A stretch of 55,003 nucleotides of DNA, filler included, from Sluysia triapertura (lineage: Eukaryota), in NCBI GenBank assembly GCA_046118255.1. It is 4 parts of 4 records of this genome, joined end to end, with 100 filler letters (N's around TTAATTAATTAA, not from the genome) between each part and the next. Parts side by side here need not be neighbours in the genome. Positions count along the whole stretch, not along the records: positions 1 to 11,698 come from JBJNIA010178474.1; 3 more parts are not named here. One strand, written 5' to 3'. Of this stretch, positions 1 through 11,698 are shown in pieces; the stretch's first letter is position 1, and each line of letters starts with the position of its first letter. Below the pieces are notes generated by a model. That model had not been told where the DNA came from, ran no database searches, and saw only the letters and a program-made list of their open reading frames with translations. Made by a program: the position numbers and the translations under genes.

Positions 1-2610
1 CCAGATGATATCTGTCATCTCAACTATCTTTTTACTTCTGACGATATCATCGACTTTGTCACAAGCCTCAACATACCTCAGGATCATCTCTTTATTTCTG
101 ACTTTGCCACTGAATCTCTCTTCCACGGTTCTCGTGCTCACAACGCCTTTATTAACATTAACAGTGCAGCTATATCGACAAAACTCTTTATCATAAACCT
201 GAATAAGCACTGGTTCCTGGTTGTGCCGATAAACACACTAGATTTGCGGAATTCTATGATTCTCTTACTACTGACCCAGATACATCTAGCTGTTCCAAGG
301 CGCAGAAAATCTTATCAACATTCTCTCTAGTATATAATTATCCTTCTTATTCTATTATCCCCTCTCGACCTCACACGTTGCAAACTAACTCCTTTGAATG
401 TGGACCTTTAGTATGTGCCTTTATTCAGCGACTATTTCAACAAAAGCACTGTACCCGCTTATGTGCCTCATCTATCAGGCCCATATGAAATATTTATGTG
501 TTGAAAAACGCCTTTCTGGAGCAGGCAAGATTTCTTCTACTTTATCTTACCGCTTCTATTTCAACCACTCGGAGTCCCTTATTTATTGCCTTATTGATCA
601 CTGTGGCAAAACTTTTACTCCAAATAATAATAACATTAATATTATTAGACATTTGGCCACTCACTCTCACAATCCTAAAGACACTACCTTATTCTGTTCA
701 CACTGTTCCCAAATATCAATTATTTCATCCCTCTCTAGTCACTCTGAAACTGTTACTACTACCTCACTAAAGTTTGAAAATCTTTTTGATATACCAGTCA
801 CTGAAAATGACTACCACAGTGTGCAATTGAGGCTTTTCTCTAGGAACATTTTTGTCCTGGCCATAAAACCAAGATTATAAAACCTGTTTGTTCTATCTTC
901 CTTTTAGCTGGTGATCTGTTCGGATTCTATAACTCCTTCTCTTTTACCTATATGATTCAATGGAAGATAATCTTTTGGCCAATACTCTGAGAGAAAAATC
1001 ATTGGCTACTTTTTATTGCAGATCGAGACACCAGCTCGTCTTATCTCTATGATCTTCTTGCCTCAAATAAACTTACTCAACTCCATACTGCCCTGAATGC
1101 AATCGTCGATGAGATATGTCTTCCCATTATTCAGCGAAGTGTTATTAACGCACAAGTTCTGTATTCTACACTTTTCCTACTTCTATTCCAGGTCTGGTAT
1201 TGAATGCTGCAATCAGCCTTTCAATATTGAAAATTTATTGCATTCTTCTATAGACAAAATATATAAATTACAACAATCCTACAAGGGCAATAAAAAGAAG
1301 TCATCCACTCATCCGATCTTGCTCAACGTAATCTCTCTTCTTTCCTCTGAAAGAAGTATTGATTCAACCTTTGCTCTTGAAATGGCCCACCGTGCTGTCC
1401 CTCCAAACACTAATACTAGGAAGAATACAAATCCTCCTGAGGAAACTGTACACTATCGAAGAGGTAAGAAATATCATGTCAAACCCAATAATCATATTAC
1501 CTCTAGCTACCTTCTCCGAAAAGCTTATGACAGGGAACCCTCTTCTGTAATCCATAAACTGCTTAGCGATGAAATTGTTGGACTTAAATACCCTCCAATG
1601 GAATCCATCATCTCTCACTTTTGTGCTTCGGAGTTTCCCAAATTTATCCAATATGACTTGTTAATCTTGACTGCATTTGAAGATTTCCTCACAGTCTTAC
1701 TCATCTGTGTAGAAGAAATCAAGACTGCTTTTCAACAAGTGATAAGTCTTCTTCTCAGGGTTCCTCTGGCATTTCCTTCTTGAACTGGAAACTTGTGTAT
1801 CCTGACTTTTACTTTTTGCTTTGCCTGTTTAACTATATCCACAGTACAGCTGATGTTCCTCAACATTGGAAAACTTTTCACACCCACCTAATTCTTAAAC
1901 TAGGAAAAAGTAGTGATTTCATTTTTCCATCTTCTTGGTGGCAGGGGCTATTGTCTTATCGGATTTACATTAAAATATTAAACCTAAGACTAATAGATTG
2001 GATCAAAGTTAGGAATCTTATTATCCCGATAGGGAAGGCATCAATCCATCCTGATGCTTGTCTTGCACATATTCACACTCTCCAGACTCTTTTATATGCC
2101 AGCACAACTCACTCTCCCAAACCTCCATTCTTTGTCTGCTGGCTTGATTCCGTGCCACACGATTGTCTGTTTTGGCTCTTTGAGAAATCTGGTTTGCAAA
2201 AACCAACACTCCTGCTACTGCAGAATCTGTACAAAGACAACTCATATGCACACTTCCTTGGCCGTCACACTTCCTGTAAAAGTTGATGTTAAACAAGGAT
2301 GTCCTTTGTCTATGATACTCCTTTTACTTGCCATCGAATCACTGCTTCGCTTTGTTATCCGTAGTGTTTCCGCCTTTACTTACTTGGGTTACTCGTTTAC
2401 TTGCCTTGCTTACGCTGATGATATCACGGTTGTATCAAACTCCTACCAATCTCTACAACAGACTTTAGATGAACTTACATCAATCTAAAATTTCGCCCTG
2501 ATAAATGTGGCTTCCTTAACACTGCCTCTTACTATTTATAATACCTCTGTTCTTATCATTAATTCAGAGTTACAATACACTTATCTTGGATCAAAAATTG
2601 GAAGTGCAAA
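1..2610 (+). mobile_element. Decayed non-LTR retrotransposon (NeSL/Utopia/R4-like): Ulp1-type cysteine protease, C2H2 finger and reverse transcriptase; frameshifted and 3' truncated
   Basis: Ulp1/C48-like motifs NKHWFLVV (His codon 208), FYDS (252-263) and QTNSFECG (381-404). C2H2 finger CLIDHC..HLATH (about 586-670). RT motifs VPQHWK, LDSVPH, VKQGCPLS, LAYADD (YADD 2411-2422), KFRPDKC and YTYLG are spread over several frames. Confidence 0.9.
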
Positions 2611-5689: not shown

Positions 5690-8070
5690 TTTTATGCCAC
5701 AGAAGAGGAAGAAAAAGAAAATGAATACTGTATCTATGATATATTTCGTTCTTCCATTAGAATCTTTTGACGGTAATCCAGAAGCTTTATCAATTTTGTG
5801 AATAAATATCAACTTTAAGCTGGGTTTTGGCTGGGATGAGGATGCTACTAGATTGAAAAGGAAACGCAGTTGAGGCTTACTAAATATCCCTGATGGAAAT
5901 AAAAATGCGTGGAAAAATTTAATCGATGATTTTAGAAGTTAACTTTCTCCTGAAGACTCTAAATTTGTTAATTTTAAAACCTTTCGAAAGAGAATGCAAA
6001 ATAGTAAAGATACCGCCAGACAATTTTTATTTGATTTTAAACATTTAGCAAATAAGGCATGCCCAGTTTCACTCTTGAGCAAAAAATTGAGTTAATTACT
6101 GAAAAATTTATTGATCGATATAAGAAACCAATAATGACAACTTTTGATATTGGATATAACTAATTTAAATGAGTTAGTGCAAAAAGCGCCAAATATAGAA
6201 AGTAGAACAGGAATTTCGCACCAATTCAATGTGATGGCCATTGAGCCTATAATTCGAACAGATATAGATGGACAAATTAATAAATTTTCTAACAATCGCA
6301 GTAATTTTAAGTATAATATTTTTCTGATGATATAAGTCTTAAAAATGATAGGAAAAAGATTTATAATAATAATTATAATGGGAATAACGTAAAATGATTT
6401 CGACAGAAAACAGCGTTTATTAGATATGAGGCTAAATAAGTATAATAATGTAAAGCAACAAAATAGTGTATATTTACAAGTTAATCATGTACATTTTGCA
6501 AAAAGAGGCCATAATAAATGTAATTGTTGGTATCGAAATTCATTTGACACTAAAAATAGAAGTAATTCAAGAAAGAGAAATAATCAAAATCGTAGTAGAA
6601 GTCCAGTTTCTCAAATATTATGTAACCAAGTGGATTTCACTAATGAAGAAAATAAAAATTTAAAAGTAGTAATGAAAGAATTGACTCTACAATTACAAAA
6701 GCAAAGTTTAAATGAGGAAGTAACTCAAGATGATACCATGGATTCAAAAATTTCAGCACTTTTACACACATTGATATAAAAGGATTCAAACTTTGTTTGG
6801 GAGAGAACCAAAAGAAGCATTCAATATTCGGTTTTCAAAAAAATTAATATCTTATTCTATCTTAGGATTTCCAGATATGAATTTACCGTATATTACGACG
6901 GATACTAGCGGTTGTGCTATAGGAGGAGTGTTAGAACAAAAAGGAAGCGAAAATACAAAGGATTATGTTATTGCTTATGTTAGTAGAGCACTTAAACCGC
7001 ATGAAATTAATTATTCACTGATCGAAAGAAGCTTTGGAAATTGCTTTGCAATCAAACAATTTTATTATTACATATGGTCACTGAAAATATATTCATTCAC
7101 AATGGCTTCTGACGAACAAAGAGAAAGATGGTTTCTTTTATTACAAGAATATGATACGGACAAGTAAAGTCAAATGCAGATGCTGATTTTTTATCCAAAC
7201 TAGATGAAAAGCAGGATGTTTTTATAAATAATATTTTACTTGAATATCATAACGGAATTTTAGGAAGACATTTGTCGTTTAGACAAACTTTATGGGTAAT
7301 AATAAAAAGAATCCACTGGGAAAATAAAAAAGGATGCTATAAATAGGTGTGATAATTGTGAGATGTGTTTACGAAGAAAGGGCTGAAAAATAAAAAAATT
7401 TACGTGAAACCATTAATACTACAGCTGAACCAATGGAAATAACTGCCATGGATGTTGCGGTCTTCAATACTAAATATATCTTAGTATTTTCGGATTACTT
7501 TACAAGATGTCCAGAGGCAAAATCTATGCCAGATCGAAGAGAAGTAACAATAGAAAAAATTTTCATAGAAGAAATCGTTTTTAGATATGGTTAGCCGAAA
7601 AAAATGATTACGGATCAAGGTACTAATTTTACTAGTGAAATGATTACATAAATTTGTAACTTCTTCCAAATTAATAATAATTGGAACTATTTAACCGTAC
7701 ATTGATACAAATGCTATCTGCGTATACAAATGATCATCAAAATGTTGGGATAAATTCATGGCACCTTGTTTATTTGCATATCGCAATGTAATTCATGAAG
7801 CAACCAAAGAATCACCATTTTATTTAATGTACCTTAGAGAAAGTAGACTACCGGTGGATTTATCCTTGATACCTGATTAATCAAAATATTTAGAAGAAAA
7901 ATATTTATAAACATTGAAGGAGAGAATGAAAGAAGTATGGACAAGAGATAAGTTAAATGTAAAGTTCCATCAAGAATCATACAAGTAATATTACGATGGT
8001 ACGGTACATCCAGTAGAATTTAAAAATGGTGAGTTAATAATACTAAATACTCCTTTAAATGAAAACAATT
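5690..8070 (+). mobile_element. Decayed Ty3/Gypsy LTR retrotransposon internal region (gag, RNase H, integrase); protease and RT deleted
   Basis: Gag-like region with CCHC knuckle CTFCKKRGHNKCNC (6488-6527, 1-bp frameshift). RNase H FPDMNLPYITTDTSGCAIGGVLEQ..VIAYVSRALKPHEINYS. Integrase HHCC region (about 7240-7380), core TAMDV..DYFTR..ITDQGTNFTS and LFAYRN..TKESPFYLMY..RLPVDL. Confidence 0.9.
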
Positions 8071-9345
8071 CTGTTCATATAGTTCTAATATCAGCTACAT
8101 AATTCTCTACATTTAATAGTGTTGATAAATACTTAATATGGTTGGAGAAATTCATGAAATCGATAGAGACCAGTGACAATAAAATTTGTGAAAATTCCGA
8201 AGCAATACTCGATAGTCATTCTGATCTTGTAATAGGAATTTTCAAATTTCACGCTATTATTTATTTCATGACTTTATTTCCTGATTTAATTTGTATTTTA
8301 ATTTTTTCACGTTTCATGTTATAAAAGATTTTTTAATTTTATATAAACATGTTTATTGATGCTCTATAGTAAAATGTTTATAATATGAATTGATTTGTCT
8401 AGGTTTAAAGATTCTCTTTAAGATAATTATTTATTAACAAAAAATATATTTTTTACACTTAACTAAACGGTTCAACTGAAAGTTTCATTAAAAAATGCTG
8501 ATTAAATCATAAATTTCATGTAATTTATTTTTGTTAATTATAATTAAAACAATTCTTAAATAAATGCCTTATTTAAACTTAAAATAACATGAACCTACTA
8601 AAATTTTATTAAGTACTTTCTAAAGTAAATTAATTAATTTAGGAAAATTGGAAATATGTAGATTTTGTTATTCTCGTAAATATCCATTTATTTATTAGTT
8701 AAATGTATTTGAAACATATATGATATATAATCTATTGTTTATTTTAAGAGTCATCTAATGTAACATCATAAATATGAAATTTTTAGTTAAATTTATTAAT
8801 TATTATTAATGCAATTAAAATTATGTTCAAATTGTTTAGTGCTATTTTAGATAATTTAATTTTCAATGTTCAATAGTTATTATTTTTAATTAATATTATT
8901 GTTATTATTAATTATTATAATCATTTTTATTATTAATTAAATGTCACTGTTTAATAAATATTATTATTAATTGTATAAATTACTATCTATATTATTATAT
9001 TATTACTTAGTATTATTAATATTTTTGTTATTTAATATTAATTTCATTTTTATTATTAATTATTGATTATTTTAATTATTAATTAACAATTAATTATAAT
9101 TATTAATATGATTTCTTATTATATTATTATTTATTATTAATTATTTTTGTTATTAATATTAATACTATTTTATTTTTATTATTTTAATACTGTTATTAAT
9201 AATTATTATTAATATTATTATTTATTATTATTAATTTTATTATTATTACTTATTTTTATTATTAATTAATGCTGTTATTATTATGCATTACACATTATTT
9301 ATTTCTTGTAAAGAAGTTTTTTTATTTTAATTATATAATGTGAAA

Positions 9346-9440
9346 TGTTGTGCGTGAGAACTCAACGATCCTAAACTTATACACTTGGGGCTAGTTCGTA
9401 AGTATCAACAAGAATAATCTGTGGAGGTTTAATTAATATG
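9346..9440. repeat. Short dispersed repeat (possible LTR end), copy 1; related to 25859-25955
   Basis: cgtgagaactcaacgatcctaaacttatacactt matches cgtgagtcccctacaatcttagacttattcactt at 26/34 positions. Both are followed by ttcgtaRgta and tggaggtt, and both start with TG. Confidence 0.55.
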
Positions 9441-10408
9441 ATAAAATGACTATTTAATTAATAACGTTTTGTATTTTTGCGTCGGAGTTTGCTACCGTGT
9501 AATTAAAAACACTGTCCTTACTAAATCGAATTTATTAATGATAAATTTAAGTCGAAATTTACAACCGTCTAATTATAAATGGCACTCCTTATTTAGCTTT
9601 TTAAATAATCATATTTAATAAATTTAACAATTTTTAAGTTTATTAATAATATAATAAAGGATTGATAATCGATTGAAGTAATAAAAAATAGATAGTACAA
9701 TAATTTAAGAAAGATGACTTTATAAATAAAAGAGAATGTATTAAATAATAAAAATTTATTATGATTAATATATAATCAAAGTAATGAATTTAATCGAACA
9801 GAACACTTTAAAAAGTCTTTCAAAAATCATTAAATAAATTTTATCTATATTTTAATATTATATATTATTATTATATTGTTATTATTAATAATTATCATTA
9901 AATATTATTCTTTATTATTATTATTAATTTCATTTTTTATTTAATTAATTATTAAATATTATTTAATAATACCTATTTAGAATAGGTTTGCCTAACAAAA
10001 TGTAAACGACAATAGAAAAAAATTCTTTGTTGTACGTGTAAGATATAATAACTGTTAAAACCGAATAATAATTATAGAAGTTTGTATATTTGTGTGTGTG
10101 TGTGTGTCAAGGATTATAAGATCATATATTTATATGACGTAATATGAACTTGAAAGTTAGTAAAACAATTTTTTAAAGCAAAATTTTACAAAAATCTATA
10201 TTTTTTGTGTACAAACATTTAAGCAAATATTAATTTATTTAATAAATTTTAAACAAATTATTAAACCTAATATTTGTTGATTATTCGTACTTGTGTGTTA
10301 TTATTAATTAAATATATTTACACAATAACATATTAACATACTAAATTTAGAAAGTATTTACACAAACTAATTTTAGAGTATTGATTGGCATTATTATACA
10401 TTATTTTC

Positions 10409-10463
<55 letters not shown>

Positions 10464-10725
10464 TATATATTATTTATTATTATTATTAAATGAGTAATAA
10501 TTTTATAATATAATTATTTTCCGCTTTGCGGAAATAGATTAATAATGATAGATAGTTATATAAATTTCGAGTATATAAAATCAAGTTGTGGAGCTGTGCT
10601 CATGCAAATATTTGGTCTTTCGATTGGTTTAGTGTTATTTTTTATTTCACGTGTTTAAAAGCAGTGGTAACATTGGAGGAGTGTAAAAAATTTTGTGCGA
10701 CAACTATCAATATTAAAAATAAAGG

Positions 10726-11695
10726 TTGTCTTTATTTAATTATTTTAGTACAACTATACTGATATCTTTGTTTATATTTGGTAAAGTATCTAAGCAACAA
10801 GTATATTTGAATAACGATGTGTTACTCGTATTGGTAGAGGAAAATGAACCGCATGAAGTTAATATATATTTTAGAAACGACTTATTGAGGTCACTTAAAA
10901 CCAATATGGGTTGGAATAACTATGACTTTGGTACAAAGTGAAAATGTAAACTGGGTTGCTTATAACAATTACAAAGTTGATCAAATTAATGAAGCGTTTC
11001 AAATAATAATAAAATTCGATTACATAAAAATAATTTTGTTTTTATCAAAACTAATGATGTATGGGTATATTGAAGGAAATTCGATATTTGTATATTTAAG
11101 AAATAACTGTTGGGGTAGTAGAGTATCATGTAACTGTGATAAAAAAAGTAGCAGTAGAAGTTGGCAAACTTAAAAATAATTAGATGCAATAGATTTATCT
11201 AATATTATTGTTTAGAAGGAGGGGCCGGTTGAAACAGATAGTAAAAGGGCAACTTTAAAAGGCACTCGAAACAGAGAAAAACTTCTAAGACAATGTCTCA
11301 AATACATGGTATTAAAAATTTCACGTGGTTAGATGGTGTTGTTAGTGATGATGTTACGGATATGCTTATATGTAAAATTCATGAATTAATAACTATGAGT
11401 AAACATGATCATATATGGGAATGGGCAGTATCACGCAAAGATGTGGAAATTTTATATTCAGCAAAAAATGCTGATGGAATAAGATGTAAAATTGTTCAAG
11501 TTTCATTAACTAAAACTAATTTCATTCTTCAACGTGGTGCTAGGCTTAGTTATGAAGATACATATGCAAATTATTATGTAGATAATAAAATATGCTAGTA
11601 CCTAATTATAATGATCCTAATGATGCAATTTCTAGCAAAATAATACAAGCACAATATCCTGGACGTGATGTCGTAGGTATAGACGTACGATATAT
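10726..11695 (+). pseudogene. Bacterial-type agmatine deiminase / Porphyromonas-type peptidyl-arginine deiminase (PAD_porph) pseudogene with signal-peptide-like N-terminus; 3' end runs into an assembly gap
   Basis: Colinear family motifs across frames: ENEPHE (10840-10857), IWVGITMTLVQSENV, KTNDVWV..GNSIFVY, LEGG..VETD, NFTWLDGVVSDDVTDM, DVEILYSAKNADG, YANYYVDNK, LVPNYNDPND and YPGRDVVGIDVR. Several frameshifts and stops. Confidence 0.88.
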
Positions 11696-11698
11696 ATA

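What the first reader, a model, noticed from the sequence alone, without database searches (positions are those of the whole stretch)
10726..11695. Bacterial-type, possibly secreted agmatine/peptidyl-arginine deiminase in an apparently animal genome (HGT candidate)
Seen: nearly the whole PAD_porph motif series in order, a hydrophobic N-terminus (FSTTILISLFIFG), host-like AT richness, and contiguity with ATT microsatellites on the same contig. The catalytic His position reads DMLI instead of DMHID, the WxRD motif is broken, and the GGxxHC motif would fall in the gap. Known: this family is typical of bacteria, plants and some viruses, and is not part of the standard animal gene set. Inference: a decayed duplicate of a horizontally acquired gene, implying an intact secreted paralog elsewhere that could provide agmatine catabolism or protein citrullination.
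Basis: partly seen in the sequence, partly recalled or inferred. Interest (0 to 1): 0.78.

Follow-up and report, generated by a model that had tools for sequence, protein, structure and literature searches.

The report
Dead copy of bacterial-type deiminase gene
The stretch is a broken, non-functional copy of a bacterial-type arginine/agmatine deiminase gene that belongs to a large family (a few intact, apparently secreted genes and dozens of wrecks) living in the nuclear genome of a parasitic flatworm, most likely after an old gene transfer from bacteria.

Summary
Observation confirmed. Window 10750-11696 (+) is a PAD_porph (PF04371) pseudogene. Against the closest intact paralog (contig C198059) it aligns over residues 1-352 of 370 at 66% identity. 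It has no start codon, 7 frameshifts, 2 in-path stops, and deletions that remove the HEGTW-WP block, the W-x-R-D aspartate and the catalytic His. The catalytic Cys lies beyond the contig end.

The assembly (619 Mb, 263,945 contigs) is an AT-rich flatworm with vertebrate and bacterial admixture, probably Protopolystoma xenopodis (inferred). It holds about 108 PAD-like stretches on roughly 85 contigs. Some 7-8 are intact intronless genes with all catalytic motifs, hydrophobic signal-like N-termini, GPI-like C-terminal tails in three lineages, and dN/dS of 0.3-0.66. More than 60 are decayed fragments.

Ten host copies form one clade among bacterial exported lipoprotein-type "agmatine deiminase family" proteins (49-56% identity). 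Decayed copies sit beside retroelements and microsatellites, and on at least 6 contigs directly upstream of eukaryote-only eIF4E-like sequence, so this is not contamination.

The intact genes score far below the AguA equivalog cut-off, so the substrate is open. The locus itself does nothing. The family is an apparently unreported HGT-derived expansion.

The parts
10750..11696 (+). PAD_porph (agmatine-deiminase-like) pseudogene, cut at its 3' end by the contig end. It covers residues 1-352 of the 370-aa intact paralog.
   Evidence: 66% identity over 312 codons, 7 frameshifts, 2 in-path stops, 40 residues deleted, no start codon
10750..10857 (+). Remnant of the signal-peptide-like hydrophobic N-terminus and the 'ENEPHE' block. 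It is followed at 10858 by a frameshift and loss of the conserved GTWLIWP block.
11053..11073 (+). Broken N-D-V-W-x-R-D motif, which reads NDVWVY then TGA. The guanidinium-binding Asp is lost.
11198..11245 (+). Degraded LEGG-x-x-E-x-DG block with an in-frame TAG at 11213.
11356..11373 (+). 'TDMLI' in place of 'TDMHIDG'. The catalytic His and neighbouring Asp are lost through substitution plus a roughly 6-codon deletion.
11592..11696 (+). Best-preserved C-terminal block (LVPNYNDPNDA...GIDVRY), 86% identical to the intact paralog. The catalytic Cys motif would follow beyond the contig end.
10390..10488 (.). (ATT)n microsatellite immediately upstream. Similar arrays lie at 8877-9284 and 9841-9963.
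   Evidence: similar arrays on other PAD-bearing contigs
6793..7164 (+). Ty3/Gypsy-type RNase H remnant on the same contig (eukaryotic context).
   Evidence: RT_RNaseH_2, E 8.7e-17
2054..2485 (+). Reverse-transcriptase remnant (RVT_1) on the same contig (eukaryotic context).
   Evidence: E 8.7e-9, 35.8 bits

Best explanation
Window 10750-11696 is a dead copy (pseudogene) of a nuclear multigene family of PAD_porph-type guanidino-group hydrolases in an AT-rich parasitic flatworm genome. The family most likely descends from one bacterial gene for an exported, lipoprotein-type 'agmatine deiminase family' enzyme acquired by horizontal transfer. After transfer it acquired host-like base composition and lost the lipobox cysteine. 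It kept or rebuilt a eukaryote-style signal peptide, gained GPI-anchor-like C-terminal tails in some lineages, and multiplied. A handful of copies remain intact and under purifying selection. These presumably act outside the cell by the usual Cys-His-Asp mechanism, hydrolysing a guanidinium group to a ureido group plus ammonia. Most copies, including this one, have decayed. Shown here: the pseudogene state, the family size, the intact paralogs and their motifs, the bacterial nearest relatives, and the eukaryotic physical context. Inferred: transfer rather than ancient vertical descent, secretion and GPI anchoring, the substrate, and the species name.
For: Pseudogene state.
Family size: 39 PF04371 matches, 108 protein-level matches on about 85 contigs and 46 DNA-level matches at 67-82% identity confined to the coding part.
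Intact paralogs: C198059, C241056, C57701 and partial C74053, C262771, C126739, C80707/C246195 and C71174/C85385. They score 284-302 bits on PAD_porph, retain HEGTW, DDVWARD, DMHID and GGMIHCVT, and show dN/dS of 0.31-0.66.
Bacterial origin: the best 120 database relatives are 49-56% identical and every named one is bacterial (Paenibacillus, Bacteroidota, Flavobacterium, Tepidibacter). Atlas neighbours are 88-91% Bacteria. Ten host copies form one clade (SH-aLRT 100) inside these bacterial sequences. Two relatives that were checked lie on gene-dense bacterial contigs.
Domestication: the bacterial relatives carry a signal peptide plus lipobox Cys and end 5-9 residues after HCVT (117 of 120). 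Host copies lack the Cys, and three lineages have hydrophobic tails 19-38 residues long. Host coding GC is 28-32%.
Eukaryotic residence: RT and RNase H remnants and microsatellites lie on the window contig. ORFs are sparse around the intact copies. Decayed copies sit 75-100 nt upstream of eIF4E-like sequence on C257165, C255883, C1198, C51613, C190034 and C47379, and IF4E matches none of 14 prokaryote control genomes.
Host is a flatworm: the AT-rich COX1 uses AAA for Asn and ATA for Ile. The intronless mitochondrial HSP70 is about 81% identical to trematode and cestode proteins.
Against: No eukaryotic PAD_porph sequences (plants, other invertebrates, other flatworms) were in the tree, so vertical descent with wide loss is not formally excluded. 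The tree used the quick method and the backbone around the host clade is a polytomy, so no donor phylum can be named. The genome's own annotated proteins seem to be withheld from the protein database, and other monogenean genomes could not be searched. There are no expression data. Signal-peptide and GPI calls are by eye, without a predictor. The intact genes lie on contigs of 2.5-13 kb with no conserved single-copy flatworm gene beside them. The direct linkage to eukaryotic genes is shown only for decayed copies.
Confidence: 0.8

Rival explanations
1. Vertical inheritance: the family is an old eukaryotic or metazoan PAD_porph gene kept in this lineage and lost, or simply unannotated, in most other animals. 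It would then not be a bacterial transfer.
For: The host clade has a long stem and deep internal divergence (dS up to about 1.1), so it is old. The family occurs in plants (PDB 1vkp/3h7c hit at E 5.6e-31).
Against: The nearest 120 relatives at 49-56% identity include no named eukaryote, although the same database returned many named flatworm and mollusc proteins for HSP70. The plant enzyme is much more distant than bacterial ones. The host proteins share the exported, N-terminally extended architecture and C-terminal motifs of one particular bacterial lipoprotein subfamily. The genes are intronless.
Confidence: 0.12
2. Contamination: the contig, or the PAD family as a whole, belongs to an AT-rich bacterium or another organism co-sequenced with the worm.
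For: The assembly does contain foreign DNA. There is a 124.7-kb TGA=Trp (Mollicutes-like) contig with its own aguA, a 67%-GC PAD fragment, and vertebrate mitochondrial contigs. Two PAD ORFs on contigs under 1 kb (C96128, C77431) group with a bacterial sequence and cannot be assigned.
Against: The window copy is a stop-ridden pseudogene on a contig with RT and RNase H remnants and long microsatellites. More than 60 decayed copies are scattered in non-coding AT-rich DNA. Six or more copies abut eIF4E-like sequence. Host copies carry eukaryote-type termini. Bacterial genomes do not carry dozens of dispersed pseudogenes among retroelements.
Confidence: 0.03
3. The window copy is not a simple gene duplicate. 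It is a passenger in an amplified composite genomic unit (PAD followed by an eIF4E-like gene and at least 1 kb of downstream DNA) that spread by segmental duplication or transposon-mediated capture. This refines the best explanation and is compatible with it.
For: At least nine decayed copies share the 3' flank with eIF4E-like sequence for 0.2-0.6 kb or more past the PAD stop, and the intact genes do not. The window copy is 78-81% identical in DNA to these decayed copies and only 73% to the closest intact gene.
Against: The window's 3' end is missing at the contig end, so its flank cannot be seen. Its 5' flank is unique apart from the microsatellite. No terminal repeats, poly(A) tail or target-site duplications were identified.
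Confidence: 0.45

Closest known systems
Bacterial exported (lipoprotein-type) 'agmatine deiminase family protein' of Bacteroidota and Bacillota, e.g. the Paenibacillus chitinolyticus, Arcicella and Flavobacterium entries
   Same: They are 49-56% identical over the full length and of the same size. They share the N-terminal extension before Y-T-M-P-x-E..HEGTWL-WP and the same NDPND...GIDVR..Y..GGM(I/V)HCVTQQQP C-terminus.
   Different: The bacterial proteins have a lipobox cysteine and end 5-9 residues after HCVT. The flatworm genes lack the Cys, some have long hydrophobic C-terminal tails, they are at 28-32% GC, and they are multiplied with many pseudogenes. No member of this subfamily has been characterised, to my knowledge.
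AguA agmatine deiminase (EC 3.5.3.12; TIGR03380; structures 2jer, 2ewo, 1vkp/3h7c, 3hvm)
   Same: They share the pentein fold family and the same catalytic Cys, His and Asp motifs, and align over the whole domain (E 1e-31 to 1e-37).
   Different: The intact flatworm genes score 176-186 bits against an equivalog cut-off of 381.8. AguA is cytoplasmic, whereas these proteins are apparently exported. No aguB partner could be assigned to the worm.
Chlorobium tepidum putative peptidyl-arginine deiminase (PDB 1xkn) and the Porphyromonas gingivalis AguA-like protein (PDB 1zbr)
   Same: These are the closest solved structures (E 6e-54 and 8e-45). All catalytic positions align.
   Different: Both lack the N-terminal export segment. 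Their substrates are not established, to my knowledge.
Porphyromonas gingivalis PPAD, a secreted citrullinating virulence factor
   Different: By the description in PMC8826395, PPAD is an 'extended agmatine deiminase'. The flatworm proteins consist of the catalytic domain alone, and PPAD was not among the PDB matches at E <= 0.001. Citrullination is therefore only a possibility.

Membership tests
PF04371 PAD_porph (window copy) | HMM match at or above the gathering score (25 bits) | tested here: inconclusive
   Two separate pieces score 24.9 and 24.4 bits in consecutive profile ranges, each just under the cut-off. The N-terminal pieces give no hit. Homology is unambiguous through the paralog (E 3e-71).
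PF04371 PAD_porph (window copy) | Catalytic His/Asp (D-x-H-x-D) present | tested here: not met
   It reads TDMLI with a roughly 6-codon deletion at 11356-11373.
PF04371 PAD_porph (window copy) | Guanidinium-binding Asp of W-x-R-D present | tested here: not met
   It reads NDVWVY followed by TGA at 11053-11073, and the next ~10 residues are deleted.
PF04371 PAD_porph (window copy) | Catalytic Cys (GG-x-x-HC) | not testable with these tools
   The contig ends at 11698, 18 codons before the paralog's end.
PF04371 PAD_porph (window copy) | Uninterrupted reading frame with a start codon | tested here: not met
   There are 7 frameshifts, 2 in-path stops and no ATG.
PF04371 PAD_porph (intact paralogs C198059, C57701, C241056) | Full-length HMM match and all catalytic motifs | tested here: met
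   Scores are 284-302 bits over profile 2-321. HEGTW, DDVWARD, DMHID and GGM(I/V)HCVT are present.
AguA agmatine deiminase equivalog (TIGR03380) | Score at or above the curated equivalog cut-off of 381.8 bits | tested here: not met
   The three intact paralogs score 175.5-186.5 bits, and 184-202 bits against NF010070 with its cut-off of 483.
Bacterium-to-animal horizontally transferred gene | Nested among bacterial sequences, with no closer eukaryotic relatives | tested here: inconclusive
   The host clade (SH-aLRT 100) sits in a polytomy of bacterial sequences, and all named relatives are bacterial. No eukaryotic PAD_porph sequences could be added.
Bacterium-to-animal horizontally transferred gene | Physical linkage to bona fide host DNA | tested here: met
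   RT and RNase H remnants and microsatellites lie on the window contig. eIF4E-like sequence lies directly downstream of decayed copies on at least 6 contigs.
Bacterium-to-animal horizontally transferred gene | Absent from related animals; expressed in the host | not testable with these tools
   No other flatworm genomes or transcriptomes were searchable.
Processed (LINE-mediated) pseudogene | Poly(A) tail, target-site duplication, homology limited to the mRNA | tested here: inconclusive
   The window's 3' end is missing. Related decayed copies share about 0.6-1 kb of 3' flank including eIF4E-like sequence and a GT..AG mini-intron-like element, which fits DNA-level duplication better.

The most novel reading that the evidence does not exclude
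The intact members form a horizontally acquired, expanded family of secreted or GPI-anchored surface enzymes. A blood-feeding monogenean living in the frog bladder would use them on host molecules, either deiminating agmatine or other guanidino compounds, or citrullinating host proteins in the manner of Porphyromonas PPAD, for nutrient salvage or immune modulation. That would be a bacterial enzyme repurposed as a parasite-host interface factor, with rapid birth-and-death turnover.
Probability: 0.25. Interest if true: 0.75.

Novelty: new member of a known kind. Interest (0 to 1): 0.5.

Why it matters
Well-supported bacterium-to-animal transfers are few, and in parasitic flatworms almost none are documented. 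I found no paper that links this enzyme family to monogeneans or to this genome. A transferred exported enzyme that has been fitted with eukaryotic targeting signals, multiplied to several intact genes and left dozens of wrecks suggests selection at the host-parasite interface. Because vertebrates lack the family, it would be a parasite-specific biochemical target. The case also shows how to separate true integration from the contamination that is present in this very fragmented assembly. The window locus itself is inert.

Tried and rejected
- The Rfam SSU search of the genome failed, so no rRNA-based identification was made.
I could therefore not look for single-copy flatworm genes beside the intact copies, nor read the aguB-like hits.
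- The aguB (TIGR03381) search gave only partial hits below the cut-off on contigs of about 1 kb and unknown origin. A full agmatine-to-putrescine pathway in the worm is neither shown nor excluded.
- Neighbouring ORFs of intact copies gave no Pfam family apart from RT fragments and a faint Avl9 hit.
- The bacterial gene neighbourhoods of two close relatives hold no polyamine genes, so they give no clue to the substrate.
- Literature searches for the family in monogeneans or flatworms found nothing.
- Ciliate-type stop-codon reassignment as an explanation for the TAA stops was rejected, because the intact paralogs and HSP70 genes read through with the standard code and the stops co-occur with frameshifts.
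- I did not run the large representative search, structure prediction or complex prediction. The family assignment is not in doubt, and those tools carry no taxon names.
- The species name (Protopolystoma xenopodis) rests on assembly size, contig count, the flatworm mitochondrial code, a vertebrate mitochondrial admixture that I read from memory as amphibian- or fish-like, and contig numbering quoted in PMC12294053. It was not verified by sequence.

Full report
**1. What is at the coordinates**

The three forward frames of 10726-11698 each carry pieces of one protein. Pfam recognises only the last two pieces as PAD_porph: 11293-11595 (24.9 bits, profile 170-269) and 11592-11696 (24.4 bits, profile 272-306). 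Each is a hair under the 25-bit cut-off, and the N-terminal pieces give nothing.

A search of the window's own assembly with PF04371 found 39 matches, including uninterrupted ORFs of 341-405 codons on AT-rich contigs. The closest is on contig C198059 (locus L003). It aligns by tblastn to the window in three frames with a summed E of 3e-71.

A frameshift-aware protein-to-DNA alignment that I wrote places residues 1-352 of its 370 on 10750-11696:
- 312 aligned codons at 66% identity
- seven frameshifts, at 10858, 11003, 11065, 11141, 11178, 11282 and 11593
- in-path stops at 10886 and 11213
- 40 deleted residues

There is no ATG. The deletions and substitutions remove the HEGTW-WP block, the Asp of W-x-R-D (NDVWVY then stop, 11053-11073) and the catalytic His (TDMLI, 11356-11373). 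The Cys motif would lie beyond the contig end. I did not fill that gap.

**2. Whose genome**

The assembly has 619 Mb in 263,945 contigs, and it is a mixture.
- COX1 searches return three vertebrate-type mitochondrial genes on contigs of about 46% GC, plus a very divergent one at 23% GC.
- In the divergent gene, AAA codons align with Asn (6 of 14, never Lys), ATA aligns with Ile/Val/Leu, and TGA aligns with Trp. This is the echinoderm/flatworm mitochondrial code.
- Intronless HSP70 genes sit on contigs of 27-29% GC. The mitochondrial one is about 81% identical to trematode, cestode, planarian and mollusc proteins.
- There is also a 124.7-kb contig whose genes need TGA=Trp (Mollicutes-like) with an unrelated aguA, and a 67%-GC PAD fragment.

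The main genome is therefore an AT-rich parasitic flatworm sequenced together with vertebrate host and bacterial DNA. The size, the contig count and the contig numbering quoted in PMC12294053 fit Protopolystoma xenopodis. That name is an inference, not a test.

**3. The family**

A protein-level search finds 108 stretches on about 85 contigs. A DNA search finds 46 places at 67-82% identity, and the similarity always starts at the coding region. The window's 5' flank is unique except for its (ATT)n array.

Roughly 7-8 genes are intact, some cut by contig ends: C198059, C241056, C57701, C74053, C262771, C126739, and the pairs C80707/C246195 and C71174/C85385.
- They score 284-302 bits on PAD_porph.
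- They keep HEGTW, DDVWARD, DMHID and GGM(I/V)HCVT, which align to the catalytic positions of solved structures (1xkn at E 6e-54).
- They have dN/dS of 0.31-0.66, that is, constrained but fast-evolving.

More than 60 other stretches carry stops and frameshifts. The window copy is one of these. It is 78-81% identical in DNA to other wrecks and 73% to the nearest intact gene, so it is an old pseudogene.

**4. Origin**

The 120 best database relatives of the C198059 protein are 49-56% identical. Every named one is bacterial: Paenibacillus, Bacteroidota MAGs, Arcicella, Flavobacterium, Tepidibacter and Rummeliibacillus. Atlas neighbours are about 90% bacterial.

In a quick maximum-likelihood tree, ten host copies form one clade (SH-aLRT 100, stem 0.5) in an unresolved bush of these bacterial sequences. 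No donor phylum can be named. Two relatives that I looked up lie on gene-dense bacterial contigs.

The bacterial relatives are exported lipoproteins, with a signal peptide ending in a lipobox Cys, and 117 of 120 end 5-9 residues after HCVT. The flatworm proteins differ in three ways:
- They keep a hydrophobic N-terminus but have no lipobox Cys.
- Three lineages (C241056, C246195/C85385, C57701) have added C-terminal tails of 19-38 residues. Two of these look like GPI-attachment signals, with small residues, a spacer and a hydrophobic end.
- Their coding GC is 28-32%.

These are the changes expected of a bacterial gene domesticated in a eukaryote. The export itself appears to be inherited from the donor subfamily rather than newly gained.

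**5. Not contamination**

- The window contig carries a reverse-transcriptase remnant (2054-2485), a Ty3/Gypsy RNase H remnant (6793-7164) and long AT microsatellites.
- Contigs with intact copies have sparse ORFs and RT fragments, not bacterial gene density.
- At least nine decayed copies share a 3' flank that encodes eIF4E-like sequence (Pfam IF4E, 30.5 bits in L056).
- An independent IF4E search of the genome puts such fragments 75-100 nt downstream of PAD fragments, on the same strand, on six contigs. The family matches none of 14 prokaryotic control genomes.

**6. What it does**

The window copy does nothing. It lacks a start codon, an open frame and two of the three testable catalytic positions.

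For the intact genes I commit to an extracellular (secreted or membrane-anchored) Cys-His-Asp guanidino hydrolase. The chemistry follows from the family. The location is inferred from the termini.

The substrate is open. The proteins score 176-186 bits against the AguA equivalog model, whose cut-off is 381.8. An aguB partner could not be assigned to the worm. The bacterial neighbourhoods are uninformative. My rough odds are:

| Substrate | Odds |
|---|---|
| Agmatine or another small guanidino compound | 55% |
| Peptidyl or C-terminal arginine | 20% |
| Other or unknown | 25% |

**7. Comparison and novelty**

The family is known, and so is bacterium-to-animal transfer as a phenomenon. What appears to be new is this particular case: an expanded, export-signal-bearing PAD_porph family in a monogenean, with a large pseudogene graveyard. 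I found no paper on it.

The main open point is eukaryotic sampling, so vertical descent keeps about 12%.

**8. Verdict**

The locus itself is ordinary (a pseudogene), but it points to a moderately interesting, apparently unreported gene-transfer family. Interest is 0.5.

Noticed in passing
L056 (C257165) 1174-2144; also C255883, C1198, C51613, C190034, C47379, L053, L058, L064, L045, L069, L070: Many decayed PAD copies are followed on the same strand, within about 100 nt, by eIF4E-like sequence and further shared DNA (at least 0.6-1 kb). Between the two lies a conserved GTGAGT...TTTTTAG element of about 35 nt that looks like a mini-intron. The PAD plus eIF4E unit seems to have been amplified as a block. 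The intact PAD genes lack this flank, except that C46092 has the element after a PAD C-terminus identical to that of C198059.
   Followed up: partly
G000:C10:83775-84833 (L005): A 124.7-kb contig at 27% GC whose genes need TGA=Trp (7 in-frame TGA in an otherwise intact aguA). It appears to be a Mollicutes-like bacterium co-assembled with the worm. Its aguA is unrelated to the host family (27-28% identity).
   Followed up: partly
L011, L012, L013 (C219470, C200653, C192378): Three different vertebrate-type mitochondrial COX1 genes, 94-95% identical to each other in protein, lie on contigs of about 46% GC. They are host DNA, several host haplotypes or species, or nuclear mitochondrial copies. 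By my reading they are not human. This bears on published claims of frog-to-worm transfer in this kind of assembly (PMC12294053).
   Followed up: partly
L008 (C96128) and L009 (C77431): A second PAD lineage at 46-50% identity to the main family, with an 8-residue insertion after GWG-K. It sits on contigs under 1 kb and is sister to a bacterial protein (P0011) in the tree. It is either a second acquisition or bacterial contamination, and this is undecided.
   Followed up: partly
L004 (C241056) 573-680; L050 (C246195) and L051 (C85385) C-termini: The C-terminal extensions of 35-38 residues end in a hydrophobic stretch after small residues (SAQS, SAN). This is the pattern of a GPI-anchor signal and is absent from 117 of 120 bacterial relatives.
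   Followed up: partly
L054 (C80707) N-terminus: One paralog has an unusually long hydrophobic N-terminal run of about 22 residues rich in I and V. It may be a signal anchor rather than a cleaved signal peptide.
   Followed up: no
window 1-2500 and 6426-8324: The window holds decayed retroelements: an RVT_1-type reverse transcriptase remnant (YADD motif region, 2054-2485) and Ty3/Gypsy-type pol remnants (RNase H at 6793-7164). All are interrupted by stops.
   Followed up: partly
window 8501-10500: About 2 kb at 14-17% GC is made largely of degenerate (TTA)n/(ATT)n arrays (8877-9284, 9841-9963, 10390-10488). Similar arrays occur on other PAD-bearing contigs.
   Followed up: partly
G000:C79030:256-984 and C62203:1-519: Partial N-carbamoylputrescine amidase (aguB)-like ORFs score 268 and 186 bits, below the 410-bit cut-off, on very short contigs. 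Their origin (worm or bacterium) could not be checked.
   Followed up: no
G000:C131182, C212807, C203898, C149822, C195144, C230767: Six uninterrupted eIF4E ORFs that appear intronless within the domain, in addition to the decayed eIF4E fragments. eIF4E may itself be a multiplied family in this genome.
   Followed up: no
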